A DNA stretch of 64,000 nt. Source: Diadema antillarum (Eukaryota). Under the pieces are notes generated by a model that saw only the letters and a program-made list of their open reading frames with translations, was not told where the DNA came from and made no database searches. Positions 6,413 through 52,322 of the stretch are shown here, piece after piece (positions within the stretch are counted from its first letter, which is position 1; each line of letters starts with the position of its first letter). The position numbers and the translations under genes were made by a program. The stretch lies in assembly GCF_040938485.1 (NCBI RefSeq), contig NW_027271076.1:310001-374000 (forward strand), read 5' to 3'.

Positions 6413-7504
6413 TTAGGATAATTCGATCCTAGGATTACTTTTCTCGGGTTGGAATTGTGATTCAAGATCTTCAAATATTGGTGTATTTCTTTTGGTTGCG
6501 TTTCGACAAAAATCTTTCACGGCTTCACGGAATTGCTTGTGACGAAGAGTGTACACTATCGGGTTCACGCAGGAGTTACAAATGGCGAGTGCATTGTCTA
6601 TGCGTGAGAGGGGACTGCGCACATAGTTCGGACAATACGCTATTTGGTCTGGAGCCCAGCAGATGACGTAGATAAGGACAACTGTCAATGTTAGCGTGAT
6701 GACTCGAGATCGCGCGATATTGTGGAACGATGCCGTGGACTCATTCGACACAAAGCGGGCGGCTTCTCTTCGGAGAGAGCGTGCAATGACGATCTGGGTT
6801 GTAAGCATGAGGGCGGTCGGGAAAGCAAAGTGGGCAACAAAGATATAAATCCCATAAAGGATTTCCAGGTTTCGCTCTTGTCGCTGATACACACACCGTC
6901 CCGTTGTCGCGCCCGTAGTGTTGTTGAAAAGAACTCGAACCATTAATATACTCGATCCAGCCCAAATCAGAAAAACGATGCGATTTACGAGTCGGCGACT
7001 TGCGAGGCGTCTAAAATGGATCGGATAAACGACAGCAAAAAAGCGATCAAGGGATACTGCCACCAGGCTGTAGATCGATGCTGTGACGGTAGTCCACACC
7101 AGAAACTCGCCTTCAATGACTTTGCAATAAAAAGCTCCCGTCAGTGAATTGGGAATAGAGTTGACTGTCGGGTGCGGAATCAAGAGGATCGAAGTGACAA
7201 AATCAGCTATTGCCAGATTTCCCACAAGGATATCCGTTGAGCGGCTCTTCGAGCGACGGCCGAACACTACAGCGATGACGAGGATGTTGCCAGTAATCCC
7301 AAGAATTGCGATGATGAGCTCGCAGATCACATACCAAGACCACGTCATACCTTCCCAAGACCACGTAATCAGATTTTGCTCAGCCACAGTCGAAACATCG
7401 CTATATCTCTCATTCAAAGCTGATTCTTCGGAGGGTGTTAGCATTTCAGTCACAACAACATCAAAATGTCCTTTTGTAGACATTTCAATAAGCGTAGTAC
7501 TCAT
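6413..7504 (-). CDS. Class A GPCR copy 1 (galanin/allatostatin-A receptor-like), 363 aa, with a net 7-aa deletion at the TM6/ECL3 junction
   Basis: 7TM motifs GN(TM1), LAIADF, DRF, CWAP, NPIVY and helix-8 FREAVK are present. The ORF-track start at 7555 lies in the intron: the acceptor TTGCAG| ends at 7531, so the first exonic ATG is at 7504. Confidence 0.9.
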   Translation of the reverse strand: MSTTLIEMSTKGHFDVVVTEMLTPSEESALNERYSDVSTVAEQNLITWSWEGMTWSWYVICELIIAILGITGNILVIAVVFGRRSKSRSTDILVGNLAIADFVTSILLIPHPTVNSIPNSLTGAFYCKVIEGEFLVWTTVTASIYSLVAVSLDRFFAVVYPIHFRRLASRRLVNRIVFLIWAGSSILMVRVLFNNTTGATTGRCVYQRQERNLEILYGIYIFVAHFAFPTALMLTTQIVIARSLRREAARFVSNESTASFHNIARSRVITLTLTVVLIYVICWAPDQIAYCPNYVRSPLSRIDNALAICNSCVNPIVYTLRHKQFREAVKDFCRNATKRNTPIFEDLESQFQPEKSNPRIELS

Positions 7505-7988
7505 TATTTTGAAAAGCAATTCCTTGTCCTCTGCAATACATGAGCAAAAGTACAAGTTAAATCAATATTATTACAAGTTGTATGTTACATCTATCGGATC
7601 GAAATGACATAATCAAAATTAAAGAGAAGTATTAGATCAGATGATTACAGAGTTTCTTTATCTTTAGAGACATGCTTACGACATCATTCGTGTATAATAT
7701 ACTTTATATTGTATTGAAAAAAATCCTTTATCAGACGAGTGTAAGAGAAATGAAAAAAAAATTGTATCACCTTGGATTAAGTCAACTTTTTCTTTTCTTT
7801 TCTTTGTGATGATGGAAATAAATAAACTATTGAATTGAATTGAATTGTATTGAGTGAGATATATCATAATCACTAGTGTATCAACATTATGTATAATTTT
7901 AGCGCTTATTCTTCCTTAAATCTGCATATAAACTATTGTTTACGACAAAAACGTTCCGATGAACCTCCAATATTCATTACAAATATGC

Positions 7989-8759: not shown

Positions 8760-9523
8760 AATAGTCATACATATAAATATCACAGTAACTGATGGTTTAT
8801 TTATAGTAATTGAGATTTTCTTAATGACATTTTTTTTTTTATCCAAGCTGTTAAACATACTTTCGTAAAATCGAGATAAAGCTGTCTTTTATCGATTCTT
8901 GTGTTTTCTAAGAGACAAAAGGAAATCACACGACTGTTGTGTAATAATCTAAGTCAAAATCATTTTCGTTGACACAATCTGTAATGCATGTGTATAAATG
9001 TACATATTGAATTTGTTATCATGAAAAGCCTGTCACACATAAGACAGCATATAATTCACATGAAATTTTGCCTTTGGCTGCAGGTTTCATAATGAATCTT
9101 TTTCTTGAGAGAAAATCAAATCGTGTGTCCATAAACAGTTCTGCATCATCTGTTATTTAACAAACATGCTAATCCCTTTCTGTAGTTTCATGTTAAAAAG
9201 TGCTAGGATTGAAACTCATTGATGTGGGAAAAAAAGTCAATTATGTATATATGAATAAGATTTAGGTTGATCATGTGGTTTTATCATTCTAGACTTCGAA
9301 AGCACTACCGGCACATCATATCAGACAATTGACTACAAGGCGTACCAAAAACAAGAGAAAGGAATAAGATGCGTGGCTGCATTTGAATTTACAAATGAAA
9401 GTTACTGTTGATGAAATTAGCCTATTTTGGTAACAGGGAATCATTTCCATGCTAGTTTCATTTATCACAACACGAGCACACACACAAACACACACACACA
9501 CACACATTGACCCATCTACTTAC

Positions 9524-17429: not shown

Positions 17430-18587
17430 CGTTTTGAAAAATCAGTTCCTTGTACTCTGCTAATATAAGCAAAAATAGAAGTTAAATCAGTATTATGTCT
17501 ATTACTTTATTTCGATGGACTCCAAATAACATGATGGAAGTCACAGAAATATGTTAAATCTAATGAATACAAAGATTTCTTATCCTAAGACACATGCTGC
17601 CTTGGCTACGGTCAGATAATCAGTAGGTCTCTCATTAGCATAGATAGCATAGATCTGCATTTTTGAAATTGTGTATTTACCACCAATGACAAGAAGAACA
17701 TTCGGATGAATTTTCACTTTCCAGTACGGATATCCGTTAAATACTATGATGTTCTCTCATTTGAACATTTTTAAACATTATCGCATTGTGTATCAGAGGC
17801 AAAGTCTACTACAAAATTATGAATTGTTGATGAAAACAATGGTAACTGGTACATATAAAATGAACGAATTTTTTTATAACCTTTTTGTTCAACAAAAAAG
17901 GGACAATAATTTCATGAAATCTTATAGAACTGTCTTTATCCATTCATTAAAACTAATTGTCTAAAAGACAAAAAATAAACACGAAACTGTCCTTTTGTTC
18001 TTGTCATGTTCACGTGCACAATTGTTAATGCATATGATTATATATACATATATAAGTATATATAGTTTCCGTGGTTTTGAAAAGGGTGTCACACCTAAAA
18101 AAAAAGCTTATAAAATCATGTCACATTAAATTTCACTCCTGGCTCAAAACTTTGAAATTAATATATTAATTGAAAATCAACTTTGGTATACATTTCTGTA
18201 TCATTTTTTTTTATTTGTTTTGCGGAAACCATTTTTTTGTACTTTTATGTAGAAATGTTAGGATTGGAGATCATTTCTGTGAAAACAAAAACTGTCCGTT
18301 TCGTATAATGATTAAGATTTAGGTTAATTATCTGGTTTTCCATTTTCTGTACTTTATCTAGGAAGCACTAGCGGAACATAATGTAAGATAGTCAAACATG
18401 AGGGCATCTAGAACCAATGGAAAGAAAATAAGAGTGATCCTGCCTTTGCACTTCGGCAGAAATATTAATATTGACGACTTTTGCCTGTTTTGTCTACTGT
18501 TAATGATAGTAGAAAACTATTTGTATGATTGTTTAATTCATCACAACACACACACGCACACACACACACACAGACCCACAGACTTAC

Positions 18588-24481: not shown

Positions 24482-25616
24482 CTAAGTTATTTCGATCTTG
24501 GGATGACGCTTATCGGGTCGGAATTGGGATTCCAGATCCCCAAATATTGGTGTAGTTGTTTTGTTCGTGTTTCTGAAAAAGTCTTTAACGGCTTCACGGA
24601 ATTGCGGGTGACGAAGGGTGTACAGTATCGGGTTCACGCAGGAGTTACAAATGGCGAGTGCGGTGACAACACGTGCAAAAGGACTACGCACAAAGGAAGG
24701 AGTGATAAGTCCCAGGTTGAAAGAGAAGAACGCTATCTGGTCTGGAGCCCAGCATATGACGTAGACAAGGACAACCGTCAATGTTAGCGTGAGTACTCGA
24801 GATCGGGCGATGTGGTGGAACGATGCCGTCGACTCGTTCGACACGAAGCGGGCGGCCTCCCGCCGGAGTGAGCGCGCAATGGCTACCTGGGTCGCAAGCA
24901 TAAGGACGGTTGGGAGGACGAACTGGACGACGAAAATATAAATCCCATAAACTATTTCAAGATTTCTGTGTTCTCGCTTATACACGCACTTTCCCAATAT
25001 CACATTTGTAGAGTTGATTAAGAAGATTCGAACCATGAAGACACACGATCCCACCCAAATAAGACAAACGATGGGATTGACCAGTCGGCGATTTGCGAAG
25101 CGTCTAAACTGGATCGGATAAACCACCGCGAAGAAGCGATCAAGGGACACTGCCACTAGGCTGTAGATTGATGCCGTTACGGTGGTCCACATCAAGTATT
25201 CACCTTCCACGACTTTACAGAATAATGCGCCAGTCCATGAATTGGGAATGGAGTTCAACTTTGGATACGGAATCAAGAGGATCGAAGTGACAAAATCAGC
25301 TATTGCAAGATTTCCCACGAGGATATCCGTTGAGCGACTCTTCGAACGACGCCCGAACACTGCAGCGATGACGAGAACGTTACCAGTGATCCCAAGAACT
25401 GCGATGACGAGCTCGCAGATCACATACCAAGGCCACGCCATACCTTTCCAAGACCACGTAATCAGATTTTGCTCAGCCACTGACGAAAAAGAGCTATATT
25501 CCTCATCGCCAGCTGTGGCTGTTCGCATTTCGGTCACCACTACATCTAAATGTCCTTCCGCAGACATTTCAATAACCGTTGCACTCAAATTGTTTTGAAA
25601 ATCAGTTCCTTGTATT
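24482..25616 (-). CDS. Class A GPCR copy 3, coding exon. Start is either the exon-1 ATG at 29579 (379 aa) or the internal ATG at 25567 (361 aa).
   Basis: Intact 7TM ORF. The ancestral first ATG reads ATTTG here (the ORF track used TTG at 25588). Acceptor GTCAG| ends at 25617. Confidence 0.9.
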
Positions 25617-29212: not shown

Positions 29213-29574
29213 TATTGTAATGCGTTCTCTTGGCAGCTCCTGATGAAGGCCATAACGAAAGAATAGTCCTCGATAATGACAAGTGCAAGAATCATCCTTT
29301 AAGTATAAGATTAAGATCAAGATTAATATTAAGATTTAATTTAATCATCTAGTTTTAATTTTTTGTACTTCAACGTTGAAAGCACTAGAGGAACATTACG
29401 TAAGATAGGGGGATATAGGTCAACTAGAAACAAGAGAAAGGTGAGCTATGGCGTTGGAATTCCAAAGAAAAATTCAAATTGACGATATTACCCTCTTTTG
29501 ATGGTAGAAAACTATGTGTATGATTGTTTAATTCACCATATCACGAACACTTGCACACAGACCCACAGACTTAC

Positions 29575-36792: not shown

Positions 36793-37929
36793 TTAATCAG
36801 CTGATCCCACGTTGGCGTGTTGGCATATCGACAACTCGATCGCGTGTGGCAAACGAAGATTTGATTTTTGCCGATGCTTTAAATGACTTTTCTCGAGTCG
36901 GTGTTGCAATTCCAAATCCTCAAATATTGGTGTATTCCTTTTGCTTTTGTTTCTGAAGAAGTGCCTCACGGCCTCACGGAATTGCGGGTGTCGAAGGGTA
37001 TACACTATCGGGTTCACGCAGGAGTTACAAATGGCGAGGGCGATGACCACGCGTGCGAGAGTACTACGCACAAAGGAAGGAGTGAGACCTAGGTTGAAGG
37101 AGAGGAATGCTATTTGGTCTGGGGCCCAGCAGATGACGTAGATAAGGACAACCGTCAATGTTAGCGTGAGGACTCGAGAACGAGCGATTTGATGGAACGA
37201 TGCCGTGGACTCATTCGACACGAAGCGGGCGGCTTCTCTTCGGAGAGAACGTGCAATGGCTATCTGGGTCACTACCATGAGGACGGTCGGGAGAGCGAAA
37301 TGAACCACGAAGACATAAATCCCGAAGACGGTTTCGAGGCTTCGTGGCTGTCGTTGATACACGCACTTTCCCACTATGACGTCCGTAGTGTTGGTCCAGA
37401 AGATTCGAACCATAAAGACACAGGATCCTGCCCAAATAAGACAAACGATGCGATTGACGAGCCGACGAGTTGCGAATCGCATAAAATGGATTGGATAAAT
37501 GACAGCGAAGAAGCGATCGAAAGACACTGCCACTAGGCTGTAGATCGATGCCGTAACCGCAGTCCACATGACATATTCGCCTTCCATGACTTTACAAAAT
37601 AATGAACCCGTCCACGTATTTGGAATCGAGTTGACTGTTGGGTGCGGAATCAAGAAGACGGAGGTGACAAAATCAGCGATCGCCAGATTTCCGACGAGGA
37701 TATCCGTTGAGCGATTCATGGAGCGACGGCCGAATACGACAACGATGACGAGAGCGTTGCCAGTGATCCCAAGAATTGCGATGACGAGCTCGCAGATCAC
37801 ATACCAAGACCATGCCATAGCTTCCCAAGACCACGAGATTAGTTCCTGCCCAACCACAGACGAAAGCATTTCGGTCACCACCACATCTATATCTACTTTT
37901 GCCGACATTCCAATAGGTGCTGCACTCAT
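36793..37929 (-). CDS. Class A GPCR copy 4, 378 aa from the exonic ATG; shortened N-terminus and extended C-tail
   Basis: Intact 7TM motifs. ORF-track residues 1-22 are the intronic polypyrimidine tract. Candidate acceptors give exon starts at 37966 or 37957, and both put the exon-1 ATG in frame. Confidence 0.9.
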   Translation of the reverse strand: MSAAPIGMSAKVDIDVVVTEMLSSVVGQELISWSWEAMAWSWYVICELVIAILGITGNALVIVVVFGRRSMNRSTDILVGNLAIADFVTSVFLIPHPTVNSIPNTWTGSLFCKVMEGEYVMWTAVTASIYSLVAVSFDRFFAVIYPIHFMRFATRRLVNRIVCLIWAGSCVFMVRIFWTNTTDVIVGKCVYQRQPRSLETVFGIYVFVVHFALPTVLMVVTQIAIARSLRREAARFVSNESTASFHQIARSRVLTLTLTVVLIYVICWAPDQIAFLSFNLGLTPSFVRSTLARVVIALAICNSCVNPIVYTLRHPQFREAVRHFFRNKSKRNTPIFEDLELQHRLEKSHLKHRQKSNLRLPHAIELSICQHANVGSAD

Positions 37930-38736
37930 CGCTTTCAAAATGAATTTCTTGTATAGCCTGTCACTACTGGCAAGAGAAAGAAAAAAAAAACAAAGCAAGA
38001 AACAAAGTGAAATAAAATGAAATAAAAGATACAACTATGTCTTATCATTTAATGTCTTTCGGATCAAAAGAACATTGTGACGATAACAAAAAAGTAAAGT
38101 AAAATATTCAGTCTGATGATTACATTCCATCATTATTCAGATATATCATTATCAAGAGTATGTGTATATAGTTACCTTAAATTTATGTGATTTAACATTG
38201 TGCTTCATTATAGCTGCGTTTTCCGGACCTTTACATTTACCGCCATTGATAACAAGAACATTATAGTGAATCTTTTCTATTCAATGAGGATGTCCTTATA
38301 CCTGCTTTCTCATTTCTATTGTTTTGAATAAATATTGAAGATTTGTCATGTTGTAAAGCAGAGACAAAGATTAGGACAAAACTATGATATATTCCAAAAT
38401 TATAGACGTCTGAGTATTATAATTGTACAAAGGATTGAAATTTGGTATCTTAGATAACCATGGTCTTATTAGGTGAAAGTACAATTTCATGTTTTAATGA
38501 AATTGCGATTATTAAAAAAAAAGTGTCTTTAAGCTATTCTTGAAAACAAACCTTTGAAAAAAATGTATGTATATTATAAGTTGTTATTTTGAAAAGCCTT
38601 TCACACTTACACGCAGGACGCTTCATGCCACTTTAATTTTCGTTTCTTGCTGAAAGGTTGAAATGGGTAAACTTTAGACAGAAAAAATAGATACGCATAT
38701 CAACACACAGTTCTTTACACTAGTAATCTCTTTATT

Positions 38737-38992
38737 TGGGACCCTGCATGACAAGACCCAACAAAAAGTCAGGATTTTTTTAGTTGAAAGGGTTGAAACA
38801 GCAGACTTTAAGTTTCAAAACGATGTATAACTCAATTAAAAAATATTCTCCAAACCTATCTGAACAAGGGACATGAAGCCACACTCGGGGGAAGTGTGTA
38901 CATACTGGGAAAAGAGGCTTTGAAGTATAGCTTCTATTCAAGCACTTAATCTTACCAAGCCGTGCTAGCTGGGCCATGACTGGGACAGAAAA
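38737..38992 (+). mobile_element. MITE family 1 fragment, intron of copy 4
   Basis: Decayed left TIR plus ~250 bp of family interior. Confidence 0.65.
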
Positions 38993-39277
38993 GTCCCCTG
39001 CGTATATGGCTAGAATTTACGTTTATCATCAGGTTTCCCATTTTCTTGAAAAGGACTGTCAGAACATTAATTGTAAGATAGTCAGAATTAAGGGCTACTA
39101 TACAAAAGCAAGAGATGGAAGAAATAGTGCGAACCTGCCTTCGGATTTCTAAAGAAATAATCATGTTGACGATATTAGCCTGTTTTGATAGTAGAACACT
39201 GTTTCCATGATTGCTCAATTTATAACAACACTAGCGCTGACACAAACACCCACACACAGAGAGACCAACACACTTAC

Positions 39278-39362
39278 CTCATGAAGAAGATCCGGTCTAT
39301 CTCGCAGTGAACATCCAGAACGACGTAGTGGAACTTCGGAAAACTTCGACACTACTTTTATA
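39278..39362 (-). promoter_or_regulatory. TATA box plus exon 1 of copy 4
   Basis: TATAAAAG at 39362-39355. The exon ends CATGAG|GTAAGT. Confidence 0.75.
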
Positions 39363-43533: not shown

Positions 43534-46049
43534 TGTTTCGAAAATCGATTCCTTTTTCCCTGTAACATCAAATGAAAAAAAGTATTAATGAATAATTCAA
43601 AACAAGTGAATAAAAAAGTCTCACTATGTTGAGCCCCTGGGGTTAAGTCAACATAAGGTAGGTCACCGAAAATTGTTCACTTTCATACATAGAACAATTA
43701 ATTATCCTTAGCCTTTTTTTTTTCATTATCATAATGATGTTGATAAGCAGTTATATAATCATTACAGAAAATGATTATGTTAATTTAACATTCTGCTTCG
43801 GTAAATCTTTGTGTTCGGAAACATTACATTTACCGCCAATGATAAGAAGAGCATAATGAATCTTCACTATTCAGTATGGGTGTTCCTTTATTAGTTCTCT
43901 CGTATTCGTTCCTTTGACACCATGTTACTTTTTGTATGAAGGACATAAAGTTCAGATCCTGAATGTGATATCTTCCGCAATTTCCAAAATTAATGATTCA
44001 GATTATGGTAAGCTAATAAAAACTGAATAAGCTAATCTGGTAGATAACCTTGTTGCTATCGAACATAATAAAGGGCATGCTGTTTGCATGAAATTGCGAC
44101 AAAAAATGAGAATTGGTACTTTTTTGTCTTTAATAAAAGACTTCGATAAAGATACATATAAAAGACACAAATAAAATGGGAATATGCTTTATGATTGTAC
44201 TACTTTATATCTTCTTGTCTGTATGGACACGATGTGTGCATGTGTGTGTGTTTTTGTACAATACACTTGCTATTTTGTAAAGCCTGTCCCAAGTTCATGC
44301 AAAAGCCTGGCATTAATTTTTGTTTGTGATTTAACGGTTCAGATGAATAACCTTGATAGAAAGCCAAATATACGTGTATACATGTATTTGTGCTCTATTT
44401 CATACACATGGCAGCCACATTCTGAAGTTTCATGTTAAAGTAAACTCGACTAGGAGTGGATTTTATTTCTAATAAAAACAAATTATCCGCTATAAAAATA
44501 CTACGATTTTCTATTCCTCATGCTTCACTTCTGAAACCACTACAGGAACATTTTGTACGAGAGTAAAATGAGTTGTCCATAATAATGCAAAGCTCTGATT
44601 TTTAGTGGACCCCTCTCTCTTGAGATAGAGGATGGATAATCTATCATGTTACGTTGTATTTCTTTTAAATTCATAGTTACTTATAATTTTCATGGTACAG
44701 TTACATTTCTTGTCAGTTCTTTTCTTGGATATAATAATGATTATCTTCTGTTGAAGAAGCAACTGAAATATCAAGATTGAATTGAATTGAATTGAATTGA
44801 AATAATAAGGTCAACAAGAAACCAGAGAAGAAAACTGTCGAAGGAGCTCTTATTTAATAAGTTTAGTTTGAGCCTTCGTTTGGATTTCCAAAGTCAAACT
44901 TGCTGATGATAGCTATCTTCTGTAGTAGACGATAATAAAATTTCTTCAGGCCACTTTGATTGCCTGCAAACTCAGCTTGAATTCATTTGTTATGTATAAT
45001 AGTATTCTAAGAAAGTTCCACTATTTTGCATAGAATTCAAGAAGATCTTTCTAATGGGCATAACAAAGAGACGCATTAACTTTGCAGTTTCTGCGCAAGC
45101 ATACCACAATATCACGTCAGTAATCCATATATGGATTATATTAACGCTGATAGATGTGCAATAATCTTTTTATAGTATTTTTATTTATTCATTTATTCAT
45201 TTCTGCCGAGGAAATCGAAAATCGATCATTCGGGTTTTTTCCCCCTCTTTGTTAGGAAAAGATCTATGGTATGACAGAGTTCGTAGGTGCACTGACTCAT
45301 GCAAAGATTGCATCTCTGTCTTGTTGTCTTTCTTTTTCTCTCTCTCTCCTGCTCACTGACATGCGCACAGAAATATCCAACTGTCTTTCTCACTCGTTCT
45401 CTCTGCTCTTTGTCCGTTTTTTTCTCTCCCCCATTACAGATCTGAATGGTTTCAGTCCTTTTCTATTAGTGTGTAGTCGTCTTCTTTGCTTTCAGATTTG
45501 TGCTCCTAACTAGGCTACTATAAAATTGTACTATGCTCTCTGAAATTCTTGTTCTTTTAAAGCAACAATAAAAGCAACAATTATGATAAGACGAAGAAAA
45601 AGAGAAGAAGAAAATAGAAAAAAATCATAATAAAAGATTATAGATCATGCGCATGCGATAAATTCAAAGAATACCTGCGTGATTTTGTTTTTGTTTTTGG
45701 CTTTTCACTCTCTGCAATAAGCATTATACCGGTATCTACAAAAACGTTTGTTATAGAAAGCTAATTTCTACTTGTACATGTTTAACCATGGTTAAATGCA
45801 GTACCTATAGTCTTATATTTTCAACTCTTTTAGAACATTCAGTGGTTTGTGTGGATTATATTGAAATTTATGTTGCCAGTAGACCAAGTGCATTACATAT
45901 GGCCAAACTATTCAATTCAGCTAATGCTTGCCATTTAAAAAAAAACAAAAACAAAAACAAAAAAACTAGCCAAATTGTTCAGGATAATGTTTCAATTTTC
46001 TTCAGATCCAAAGAAGAAAGACAATAGTTTTGGAGAAAGTAAAGTAGAT

Positions 46050-48976: not shown

Positions 48977-50101
48977 TTACGCAATGTTTATCCTAGGATT
49001 ACTTTTCTCGGGTCGGTATTGTGATTCCAGATCCTCAAATATTGGTGTATTTCTTTTGCCTCTGTTCATGAAGAAATCCTTAACGGCTTCACGGAATTGT
49101 TGGTGGCGAAGTGTGTACACTATTGGGTTCACACAGGAGTTACAAATGGCGAGTGCGACGAGAAAGCGTGCAAAAGGACTACGCACAAAGGAAGGAGTAA
49201 GCCCCAGGTTGAAAGTAAAATACGCTATTTGGTCTGGGGCCCAACAGATGACGTAGATGAGGACAACCGTTAATGTTAGTGTGAGGACTCGAGATCGAGC
49301 GACATTGTGGAACGATGCTGTGGACTCATTCGACACGAAGCGAGCGGCCTCCCGTCGAAGGGAACGCGCAATGGCTGTCTGGGTCCCAATCATAAGAGCA
49401 GTCGGGATAGTAAACAGGATAACAAAGATGTAAATCCCATAGACAACTTCAAGGATTCGTGGTGGTCGCTGATACACGCACTTTCCCACTACGACGTCTG
49501 TAGTGTTGGTTAAGATGATCTGAACCATCAAAATACATGATACCGCCCAAAGAAGACATATGATGATATTTACGAGTCGGCGATTGACCAAACGCTTAAA
49601 ATGGATCGGATAAACGACAGCGAAGAAACGATCGAAGGACACTGCCACCAGGCTGTAGATCGACGCCGTAATCGTGGTCCACATCAAATATTCTCCTTCC
49701 AAGACTTTACAATATAATGCTCCTGCCCATGAATTGGGAATAGACTTGATGTTTGGGTACGGAATCAAAAGGATTGAAGTGAGAAAATCAGCTATCGCCA
49801 AATTTCCTACGAAGATATCCATTGAGCGACTCTTTCCGCGAGTCTTCGAGCGACGGCCAAACACCACGGCGATGACGAGAGCGTTGCCAGCGATCCCAAG
49901 AATTGCGATGACGAGCTCGCAGATCACATACGAAGACCACGTCATAACTTCCCATGACCATGTGACCAGGGGTTGCTCAGCTGCGGACGAAAAATCGCTA
50001 TATTTCTCTTCGGCATCTAATTCGTAGGAGGCTGTTAGCATTTCGGTCCCTACCTCCTTTAAGTATAGTTTTGAGGACACTCCAGTAAGAGTTGCATTCA
50101 T
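48977..50101 (-). CDS. Class A GPCR copy 6, 374 aa, intact
   Basis: Full set of class A motifs. Acceptor TTACAG| ends at 50128. Confidence 0.93.
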   Translation of the reverse strand: MNATLTGVSSKLYLKEVGTEMLTASYELDAEEKYSDFSSAAEQPLVTWSWEVMTWSSYVICELVIAILGIAGNALVIAVVFGRRSKTRGKSRSMDIFVGNLAIADFLTSILLIPYPNIKSIPNSWAGALYCKVLEGEYLMWTTITASIYSLVAVSFDRFFAVVYPIHFKRLVNRRLVNIIICLLWAVSCILMVQIILTNTTDVVVGKCVYQRPPRILEVVYGIYIFVILFTIPTALMIGTQTAIARSLRREAARFVSNESTASFHNVARSRVLTLTLTVVLIYVICWAPDQIAYFTFNLGLTPSFVRSPFARFLVALAICNSCVNPIVYTLRHQQFREAVKDFFMNRGKRNTPIFEDLESQYRPEKSNPRINIA

Positions 50102-52031: not shown

Positions 52032-52277
52032 TATTATATTATCTCCTGTAGAAGAAGGAACTAAAATATCACTATTGAATTGAATTGAATTGAAACATTG
52101 AAACATAAGGTCAACAAGAAACAAGAGAAGAAAACTGTCGAAGGAGCTCATATAATACATTTAGTGTGAGCCTTCGTTTTGATTTCCAAAGTAAAATTTG
52201 CTGATGATAGCTACCTTGTTTATAAGTATGATATTCTTATGACTGATTGCTTAATTGTATCACCATACGAGTAAATA

Positions 52278-52316
<39 letters not shown>

Positions 52317-52322
52317 CCTTAC

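What the first reader, a model, noticed from the sequence alone, without database searches (positions are those of the whole stretch)
37927..39282. Copy 4: an independent +2 change also puts the exon-1 ATG in frame
Seen: the acceptor-to-ATG distance is 28 nt (GACAG| at 37957) or 37 nt (GCCAG| at 37966) instead of 26. This gives MRLYKKFILKAM... or MSSDRLYKKFILKAM..., both in frame, and the original ATG is retained. The extra bases lie at the acceptor, not at the start codon as in copy 3, and the added peptide uses the other reading frame. Inference: convergent removal of the overlapping uORF in two paralogs (plus ATG loss in copy 2) suggests repeated selection for de-repression; chance is possible because one in three indels restores frame.
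Basis: partly seen in the sequence, partly recalled or inferred. Interest (0 to 1): 0.7.

Follow-up and report, generated by a model that had tools for sequence, protein, structure and literature searches.

The report
In-frame upstream ATG in urchin receptor
In one gene of a sea-urchin receptor family, two extra bases just after the splice acceptor put a small upstream start codon in frame with the receptor; the change is real and old, but it looks like ordinary drift of a fast-changing 5' leader and shows no sign of selection.

Summary
The window is Diadema antillarum DNA with seven tandem class-A GPCR paralogs on the minus strand. Each has a TATA-driven exon 1 of about 52 nt ending ATGAG|GTAAGT, and one coding exon.

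**Observation: confirmed.** In copy 4 the acceptor-to-ATG distance is 28 nt (34 or 37 nt from two nearby AGs) against 26 in the family. The exon-1 ATG (39282) is in frame for all three acceptors, and the family ATG (37929) is kept.

**New evidence:**
- The +2 is identical on the other haplotype and in the D. setosum ortholog, so it predates that split.
- The GCCAG acceptor is not conserved; GACAG is.
- The D. setosum ortholog lost exon 1 to a transposon and carries a frameshift.
- Copy 4 has a second, 5-codon uORF closed inside exon 1.

**Family survey.** Across 21 exon-1-bearing genes in two species the junction ATG overlaps out of frame in 8, is in frame in 4 by independent events, and is absent in 9. 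ATG retention, indel counts and frame classes (p about 0.09) all fit near-neutral turnover.

**Limits.** No RNA run was listed, so the splice junction and any translation effect are untested. Selection for de-repression is not supported and not excluded. The earlier scan notes on this family all come from this same window.

The parts
39355..39362 (-). TATA box (TATAAAAG) of copy 4
   Evidence: Conserved in all 21 family exon-1 modules, 77-104 nt before the donor
39328..39337 (-). Conserved GAAGTTCCAC block about 30 nt after the TATA box; inferred initiator and transcription start near 39329
   Evidence: Invariant in the six window copies (alignment A1). The start site itself is inferred; no RNA data
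39278..39329 (-). Inferred non-coding exon 1 (about 52 nt)
   Evidence: Bounded by the inferred start and the invariant donor. An nhmmer profile finds one such module upstream of every intact family gene
39297..39314 (-). Upstream uORF 1: ATG TTC ACT GCG AGA TAG (MFTAR*), closed inside exon 1, context TGGatgT
   Evidence: A homologous 7-codon uORF is in copies 2 and 3, the P0008 gene, and the D. setosum c3, c1 and gA orthologs
39280..39282 (-). Junction-proximal upstream ATG (context TTCatgA), 5 nt before the donor; in frame with the receptor in copy 4
39272..39277 (-). Splice donor GTAAGT
   Evidence: G+1, T+2 and G+5 in 21 of 21 family exon 1s; A+3 and A+4 in 20 of 21
37958..39277 (-). Intron (1320 nt to the homologous acceptor)
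   Evidence: Partly alignable with D. setosum (window 38310-38949 to L001 9226-9840)
37969..38003 (-). Polypyrimidine tract
   Evidence: Read directly
37958..37968 (-). Three candidate acceptor AGs: CCAG| (exon from 37966), TAG| (from 37963), GACAG| (from 37957). Only GACAG| is homologous to the family acceptor and conserved in D. setosum
   Evidence: In D. setosum the first site reads GGTGG
37930..37957 (-). 28-nt leader of exon 2; the 2 extra bases lie in its first 6 nt (GCTATA)
   Evidence: Alignments A2 and A3. The same 28 nt are found on haplotype B and in D. setosum
36793..37929 (-). Copy 4 receptor CDS from the family ATG (378 aa plus stop), 7tm_1
   Evidence: Pfam E 1.3e-41. The RefSeq-length protein is 378 aa. 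Lineage-polarised changes are 14 synonymous and 11 non-synonymous

Best explanation
Copy 4 is an intact member of a Diadema-specific tandem family of rhodopsin-type GPCR genes.

**Gene structure (inferred from conservation, not from RNA).** A TATA promoter drives a non-coding exon 1 of about 52 nt. That exon is spliced through an invariant AG|GTAAGT donor to a single coding exon.

**The change.** The family's ancestral spacing leaves an exon-1 ATG, 5 nt before the donor, one base out of frame, so it opens a uORF that runs over the receptor's start codon. On the copy-4 stem branch, before D. antillarum and D. setosum split, two bases were gained just after the acceptor, possibly by TA to TATA slippage. 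This turned the overlapping uORF into an optional 11-residue N-terminal extension (MRLYKKFILKA) and left the family ATG in place.

**Expected translation (inferred).**
- Some ribosomes translate the 5-codon uORF 1.
- Few start at the weak-context junction ATG (TTCatgA).
- Most start at the family ATG (GCGatgA).

**Why it happened.** The change is best read as nearly neutral turnover in a weakly constrained leader. The same leader has gained or lost ATGs and indels in most lineages, and no adaptive switch is needed to explain it.
For: **Structure.**
- The TATA box, the GAAGTTCCAC block and the donor are conserved in 21 exon-1 modules of two species, while the adjoining intron diverges.
- An acceptor with a pyrimidine tract sits at a fixed 26 nt in most genes.

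**Frame.**

**Age and reality.** The sequence is identical on the second haplotype. The D. setosum ortholog has the same +2 and the same 28-nt spacing. The tree places one event on the copy-4 stem.

**Copy 4 is a working gene in D. antillarum.** The ORF is intact, the alleles differ by 4 synonymous and 1 non-synonymous change, and dN/dS against the ortholog is 0.32.

**Neutral turnover.**
- Junction-ATG states are 8 overlapping, 4 in frame and 9 absent.
- The ATG columns are no more and no less conserved than their neighbours.
- The leader indel rate is at or below the intron rate.
- The D. setosum copy with the same +2 lost exon 1 and is frameshifted.

**Context.** All junction ATGs have a pyrimidine at -3, and all main ATGs have a purine at -3.
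Against: - No RNA evidence for the transcription start, exon 1 or the junction; no run was listed.
- In-frame outcomes are somewhat enriched. Five of 8 indel events fall in the +2 class (p about 0.09), and 4 of the 5 frame-changing events in ATG-bearing genes are in frame. That leaves room for weak selection.
- Eight ATG losses were observed against a rough expectation of 4 to 8.
- A weak context does not guarantee bypass. In human data, first ATGs often initiate more than the CDS start (PMC9943669).
Confidence: 0.6

Rival explanations
1. Repeated positive selection for de-repression. The overlapping uORF represses translation, and paralogs that needed higher output removed it independently by frame change or ATG loss.
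For: - Four independent in-frame conversions: copy 4, copy 3, the P0008 gene and the D. setosum copy-2 ortholog. There are also at least 8 ATG losses.
- In-frame outcomes outnumber the other frame among frame-changing events, 5 to 2.
- Deleting the ATG of an overlapping uORF raises CDS output in reporters (PMC9943669).
Against: - No statistic reaches significance (p about 0.09 and 0.19).
- ATG retention matches its neighbouring columns.
- Indels are not in excess.
- The weak ATG context implies a small gain.
- Copies 2, 3 and 4 carry another uORF upstream.
- The D. setosum ortholog with the same change became a pseudogene.
Confidence: 0.15
2. The exon-1 ATG is irrelevant. Copy-4 mRNA does not contain it, because transcription starts elsewhere or exon 1 is spliced differently, so the frame relation has no consequence.
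For: - No RNA run could be listed.
- The RefSeq protein is 378 aa from the family ATG, not the 389-aa extended form.
- Three competing AGs sit at the acceptor.
Against: - The TATA box, initiator-like block and a perfect donor are conserved in 21 genes of two species, with one module per gene.
- Pseudogenised copies are the ones that lose the module: copy 5 on haplotype A and the D. setosum copy 4.
- All three acceptor candidates keep the frame.
Confidence: 0.17
3. The extension is the functional novelty. The lysine-rich 11 residues change the membrane insertion or trafficking of the receptor's N-terminus, and the exon-1 ATG is now the main start.
For: - The frame has been kept open in two species since the split.
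- The family tolerates variable N-termini. The family ATG is lost in five genes, which then start at the next Met.
Against: - The family ATG and its purine at -3 are retained in both species.
- The leader has 5 substitutions in 28 nt between the species, three of which change extension residues.
- Four positive charges on an extracellular tail would be expected to hinder its translocation (inference from the positive-inside rule).
- The upstream ATG has a weak context.
Confidence: 0.05

Closest known systems
The overlapping-uORF and N-terminal-CDS-extension classes of upstream start sites (as classified in human 5'UTRs, PMC9943669)
   Same: An upstream ATG whose frame relative to the CDS decides whether it diverts ribosomes (overlapping uORF) or lengthens the protein. 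Small indels convert one class into the other.
   Different: Here the ATG sits 5 nt before a splice donor, so the relation is set across an intron. It is seen as a polymorphism among paralogs of one family. No translation data exist.
Echinoderm lineage-specific expanded rhodopsin-type receptors (surreal-GPCRs of Strongylocentrotus purpuratus; OR-like genes of starfish and sea cucumbers, PMC7042368, PMC5442662)
   Same: Tandem arrays of rhodopsin-type GPCR genes with a single coding exon, expanded within one lineage. The closest relatives are in the same genus, and identity to other urchins is 47% or less.
   Different: Placement in the described groups A-F and expression in sensory appendages were not tested. 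RefSeq names them allatostatin-A/galanin receptor-like by similarity only.
Vertebrate olfactory-receptor gene architecture: short non-coding 5' exon(s) spliced to one coding exon (own knowledge, not checked here)
   Same: A small promoter-proximal non-coding exon, an intron of 1-4 kb, and an acceptor a few tens of nt before the start codon.
   Different: Unrelated expansion. A TATA box at a fixed distance and a conserved donor-proximal ATG are features of this family.

Membership tests
Rhodopsin-type (class A) GPCR, Pfam 7tm_1 | 7tm_1 profile match above the gathering score | tested here: met
   143 bits against a cut-off of 30.5, E 1.3e-41, residues 57-310
Rhodopsin-type (class A) GPCR, Pfam 7tm_1 | DRY-type motif after TM3 and NPxxY in TM7 | tested here: met
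   The copy 4 translation contains FDRFFAV and NPIVY
Echinoderm lineage-specific expanded chemoreceptor-like GPCRs (surreal-GPCR type) | Tandem array of genes with one coding exon, expanded within a lineage | tested here: met
   Seven copies in the window and at least 8 more on the same contig. Orthologous arrays are present in D. setosum. Identity to non-Diadema urchins is 47% or less
Echinoderm lineage-specific expanded chemoreceptor-like GPCRs (surreal-GPCR type) | Phylogenetic placement in the described groups, and expression in tube feet or pedicellariae | not tested
   No S. purpuratus group sequences were fetched and no RNA run was listed
In-frame upstream AUG giving an N-terminal CDS extension | Same frame as the CDS with no intervening stop | tested here: met
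   2+28, 2+34 and 2+37 nt are all multiples of 3, and the frame is open
In-frame upstream AUG giving an N-terminal CDS extension | The AUG lies in the mature mRNA (start site upstream of it, exon 1 spliced to exon 2) | not testable with these tools
   The look-up of sequencing runs listed no run, so read laying could not be used. Support comes only from conservation
In-frame upstream AUG giving an N-terminal CDS extension | Ribosomes initiate at it | not testable with these tools
   Needs ribosome profiling, reporters or N-terminal proteomics. The context TTCatgA is weak
Allatostatin-A / galanin-type neuropeptide receptor (the RefSeq product name) | Orthology to bilaterian AstA/galanin receptors | tested here: inconclusive
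   Only '-like' names are given. The paralogs carry six or more different receptor names. The best non-echinoderm hit is 26% identical

The most novel reading that the evidence does not exclude
The junction-spanning upstream ATG is a family-wide translational brake on these receptor genes. Diadema lineages have repeatedly released it under selection, by frame-restoring indels (copy 4, copy 3, the P0008 gene, the D. setosum copy 2) or by ATG loss. Individual paralogs would then be tuned at the level of translation, not transcription.
Probability: 0.12. Interest if true: 0.55.

Novelty: new member of a known kind. Interest (0 to 1): 0.25.

Why it matters
The finding itself is ordinary. It documents how quickly upstream ATGs, start codons and leader lengths turn over in a young receptor family, and that a 2-nt indel can switch an overlapping uORF into an N-terminal extension across a splice junction.

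- **Practical value.** The RefSeq N-termini of these genes are inconsistent, and one model fuses two genes. The exon-1 / acceptor / first-Met map given here can correct them.
- **If selection were shown.** The family would become a compact natural series for testing uORF repression. It holds overlapping, in-frame and ATG-less leaders on near-identical promoters.

Tried and rejected
- **RNA evidence.** The look-up of sequencing runs on exon 2 listed no run, so read laying could not be used, and its single search is spent.
- **Bacterial-type promoter scan.** Irrelevant for a eukaryote; ignored.
- **First regular expressions for acceptors and exon 1.** They missed diverged members and were replaced by an nhmmer profile and tblastn anchoring.
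- **The copy 3 row in the first dN/dS table.** It is out of register because of its +2 and must be disregarded.
- **Intron alignments between species.** They are partly non-homologous, so their substitution distances are inflated. Only the indel-event density was used, as a rough neutral yardstick.
- **Rejected: that 28 nt is ancestral and 26 nt derived.** Copy 4 is nested inside a clade whose other members and outgroups have 26 nt.
- **Rejected: that the +2 is an assembly error.** It is present on two haplotypes and in a second species.
- **Association between the short uORF 1 and loss of the overlapping uORF.** One of 7 against 7 of 14, which is not significant and not phylogenetically independent.
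- **Frame walks across the junction.** They were done in memory only. No joined sequence was saved or sent to a search tool.

Full report
**What the window is.** The window holds seven tandem ORFs of about 370 aa on the minus strand. They match Pfam 7tm_1 (E about 1e-41). A protein search identifies the source as Diadema antillarum, contig JBFRCO010000188.1 of GCA_040938485.1. Many paralogs lie on the same contig, and orthologs lie in D. setosum. Identity to other sea urchins is 47% or less, so this is a Diadema-specific expansion of rhodopsin-type receptors. It is the kind described in echinoderms as surreal-GPCRs or OR-like genes (PMC7042368). I call the copies c1 to c7 in plus-strand order. 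The finding concerns c4, whose CDS is 37929-36793.

**Gene anatomy.**
- A BLAST of the region upstream of c4 against the window finds a homologous module upstream of every copy except c5.
- The alignment shows a TATAAAAG box, an invariant GAAGTTCCAC block about 30 nt later, and a tail ending TTCTTCATGAG|GTAAGT about 85 nt after the TATA box. The sequence downstream diverges into a (TG)n repeat.
- Upstream of each ORF a pyrimidine tract and a CAG lie 26 nt before the family ATG.
- An nhmmer profile of the exon-1 module finds exactly one module per intact gene in 11 further loci from both species.
- Across 21 modules the donor is G+1, T+2 and G+5 in all 21, and A+3 and A+4 in 20.
- I infer a non-coding exon 1 of about 52 nt spliced to a single coding exon. 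This rests on conservation alone.

**Check of the observation.**
- For c4 the upstream ATG is at 39282-39280, exon 1 ends at 39278, and the family ATG is at 37929.
- GACAG| gives 28 nt and GCCAG| gives 37 nt.
- With the two exon-1 bases after the ATG, all three spacings are multiples of three with no stop.
- c1, c5, c6 and c7 have 26 nt. c2 has 27 and has lost the ATG (GAGAGAG|GT). c3 has TT inserted into the family ATG.
Its conclusion does not depend on which acceptor is used.

**Which acceptor.** GACAG| aligns with the family acceptor and is conserved in the D. setosum ortholog. GCCAG is replaced there by GGTGG. In D. antillarum the pyrimidine tract abuts the upstream AG, so use of more than one site is possible. 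Tandem YAG-TGN-CAG acceptors recur in c3, c8 and the P0008 and P0013 genes.

**Age and independence.**
- A second D. antillarum contig (L009, JBFRCO010000492.1) is collinear with window 47190-25779 at 95-99.9% identity. The assembly is known to retain both haplotypes (PMC13511894; bioRxiv 10.64898/2026.05.24.727502), so I treat L009 as the other allele.
- Its c4 exon 1 and leader are identical. Its CDS differs at 5 sites, one of them non-synonymous.
- The D. setosum ortholog (L001) has the same GCTATACAAG start of exon 2 and the same 28-nt spacing.
- A maximum-likelihood tree of 25 coding sequences pairs each window copy c1 to c5 with its D. setosum ortholog. It nests c4 inside a c1-c4 clade whose other members have 26 nt.
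- The +2 is therefore one derived event on the c4 stem, older than the species split.
- The TT of c3 is absent from the D. setosum c3 ortholog, which reads CTG at that place. It is a separate and younger event.

1. c4's exon 1 holds another ATG (39314, context TGGatgT) that opens a 5-codon uORF closed by a TAG inside exon 1. Homologs of 7 codons occur in c2, c3, the P0008 gene and three D. setosum genes.
2. The D. setosum c4 ortholog has no exon 1 or TATA box. The syntenic interval is an (AT)n repeat plus an element with 134-nt inverted ends and a transposase-HTH remnant. Its CDS carries a 1-nt deletion that shifts the frame. The lineage carrying the +2 was therefore not protected from decay.
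3. D. antillarum c4 itself looks functional. Polarised changes on its branch are 14 synonymous and 11 non-synonymous, and pairwise dN/dS is 0.32.

**Family survey (21 genes with an exon 1, two species).**

| State of the junction ATG | Genes |
|---|---|
| Opens an out-of-frame uORF overlapping the start (8) | c7, c6, c5 on haplotype B, c1, the P0011 gene, D. setosum c5 and c1 orthologs, the P0015 gene |
| In frame (4) | c4 (+2 at the acceptor); c3 (+2 in the old ATG); the P0008 gene (leader 25 nt); D. setosum c2 ortholog (leader 31 nt through a T9 run, family ATG now ATA) |
| Absent (9) | CACGAG or TACGAG in c8 and the P0010 and P0014 genes; CATACGAG in D. setosum gA; CATAAG or AATAAG in the P0004 gene and the P0013 pair; CCTGAG in D. 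setosum c3; GAGAGAG in c2 |

- The P0008 exon 1 lies 9.5 kb upstream, across a retroelement.
- The P0010 gene, counted as absent, has a different ATG 14 nt before the donor that also opens an overlapping out-of-frame uORF.
- The ATG/ACG alternation is at a CpG, so deamination alone can create the ATG.
- The family ATG is also dispensable. It is lost in five genes, which then start at a Met seven codons downstream.

**Is this more than drift?**
- The three ATG columns carry their majority base in 19, 16 and 18 of 21 genes. The seven columns before them average 0.77, which predicts that 46% of genes keep any given triplet. The observed figure is 57%.
- Between the two species, indel events per aligned nt are about 0.019 in introns, 0.007-0.010 in the leader and 0.005 in exon 1. 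Leader indels are therefore not in excess.
- Scaled to the c4 stem branch, about one neutral indel is expected in 28 nt.
- The eight indel events in the family fall 5:2:1 into the in-frame, other-frame and frame-neutral classes. The binomial p is about 0.09.
- Among ATG-bearing genes with a frame change the split is 4:1, p about 0.19.
- This is a mild trend that fits weak selection against overlapping uORFs. It shows nothing on its own.

**Likely mechanism.**
- All junction ATGs have a pyrimidine at -3 and A at +4. All main ATGs have a purine at -3.
- I infer that most scanning ribosomes pass the junction ATG. In ancestral-type copies those that do not pass are diverted into the overlapping uORF. 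In c4 they make a receptor with 11 extra residues.
- Deleting the ATG of overlapping uORFs raises reporter output in human genes (PMC9943669). The same paper also shows that first ATGs can out-initiate the CDS despite a weak context, so the size of the effect is open.
- Four positive charges in the added peptide would, by the positive-inside rule, not favour an extracellular tail (inference).

**Verdict.** The adaptive reading is not supported by any test available here, and chance suffices. The kind of event, conversion between an overlapping uORF and an N-terminal extension, is known. This is a new instance in an undescribed family. The earlier scan notes on this family (copy 3, copies 1/6/7, copy 5) come from the same window, not from other DNA.

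Noticed in passing
window 44929-44936 against L009:2757-2999: The loss of copy 5's TATA box, exon 1 and donor is allelic. The other haplotype keeps a 242-nt segment carrying them, and the deletion is flanked by CTAC(T/C)ACA-like microhomology. Both haplotypes share copy 5's premature stop, so pseudogenisation came first.
   Followed up: partly
L001:7900-11100 (D. setosum OZ188207.1): The D. setosum ortholog of copy 4 has its promoter and exon 1 replaced by an (AT)n repeat and a roughly 950-nt element with 134-nt inverted ends and a transposase-HTH remnant. A 1-nt deletion shifts the frame in the third intracellular loop. The public protein model (326 aa) skips over it.
   Followed up: partly
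window 39297-39314, 29611, 18623 (minus strand) and relatives: A short uORF (context TGGatgT, 5-7 codons, closed inside exon 1) occurs in copies 2, 3 and 4, the P0008 gene and three D. setosum genes. It occurs mostly where the overlapping uORF is gone (1 of 7 against 7 of 14), which is not significant.
   Followed up: partly
exon-1 tails, e.g. L008:8860-8870, L007:8935-8947, L007:19175-19185: The junction ATG alternates with ACG at a CpG (CACGAG or TACGAG). CpG deamination could therefore create the upstream ATG repeatedly, and the ancestral state is ambiguous.
   Followed up: no
L002:16929-16985 (D. setosum copy-2 ortholog): The leader is 31 nt through a T9 run, against T5 in D. antillarum and T4 in the family, and the family ATG is changed to ATA. 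The exon-1 ATG is in frame with the next Met. The homopolymer length could be affected by sequencing error.
   Followed up: no
window 6413-7555, 24482-25588, 48977-50101; L008:10001-19220: The RefSeq-length proteins start at inconsistent Mets (copy 1 311 aa, copy 3 348 aa, copy 6 354 aa). One model (396 aa) joins the gene upstream of copy 7 to copy 7. The N-termini of this family need re-annotation.
   Followed up: partly
window 36793-36930 and 37830-37870: Copy 4 and its D. setosum ortholog share a C-terminal tail about 20 aa longer than in the paralogs. They also share a deletion of about 15 aa in the acidic N-terminal segment (TEMLSSVVGQEL against TEMLTASPESSGDEEYNTFSSVAGKNL).
   Followed up: no
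window 39240-39272, 29530-29570, 18530-18585, 9430-9520, 52255-52318: A (TG)n microsatellite starts within about 10 nt of the exon-1 donor in most copies.
   Followed up: no
L006:7997-9118: A reverse-transcriptase ORF (RVT_1, E 1e-35) lies in the 9.5-kb interval between the only available exon 1 and the coding exon of the P0008 gene.
   Followed up: partly
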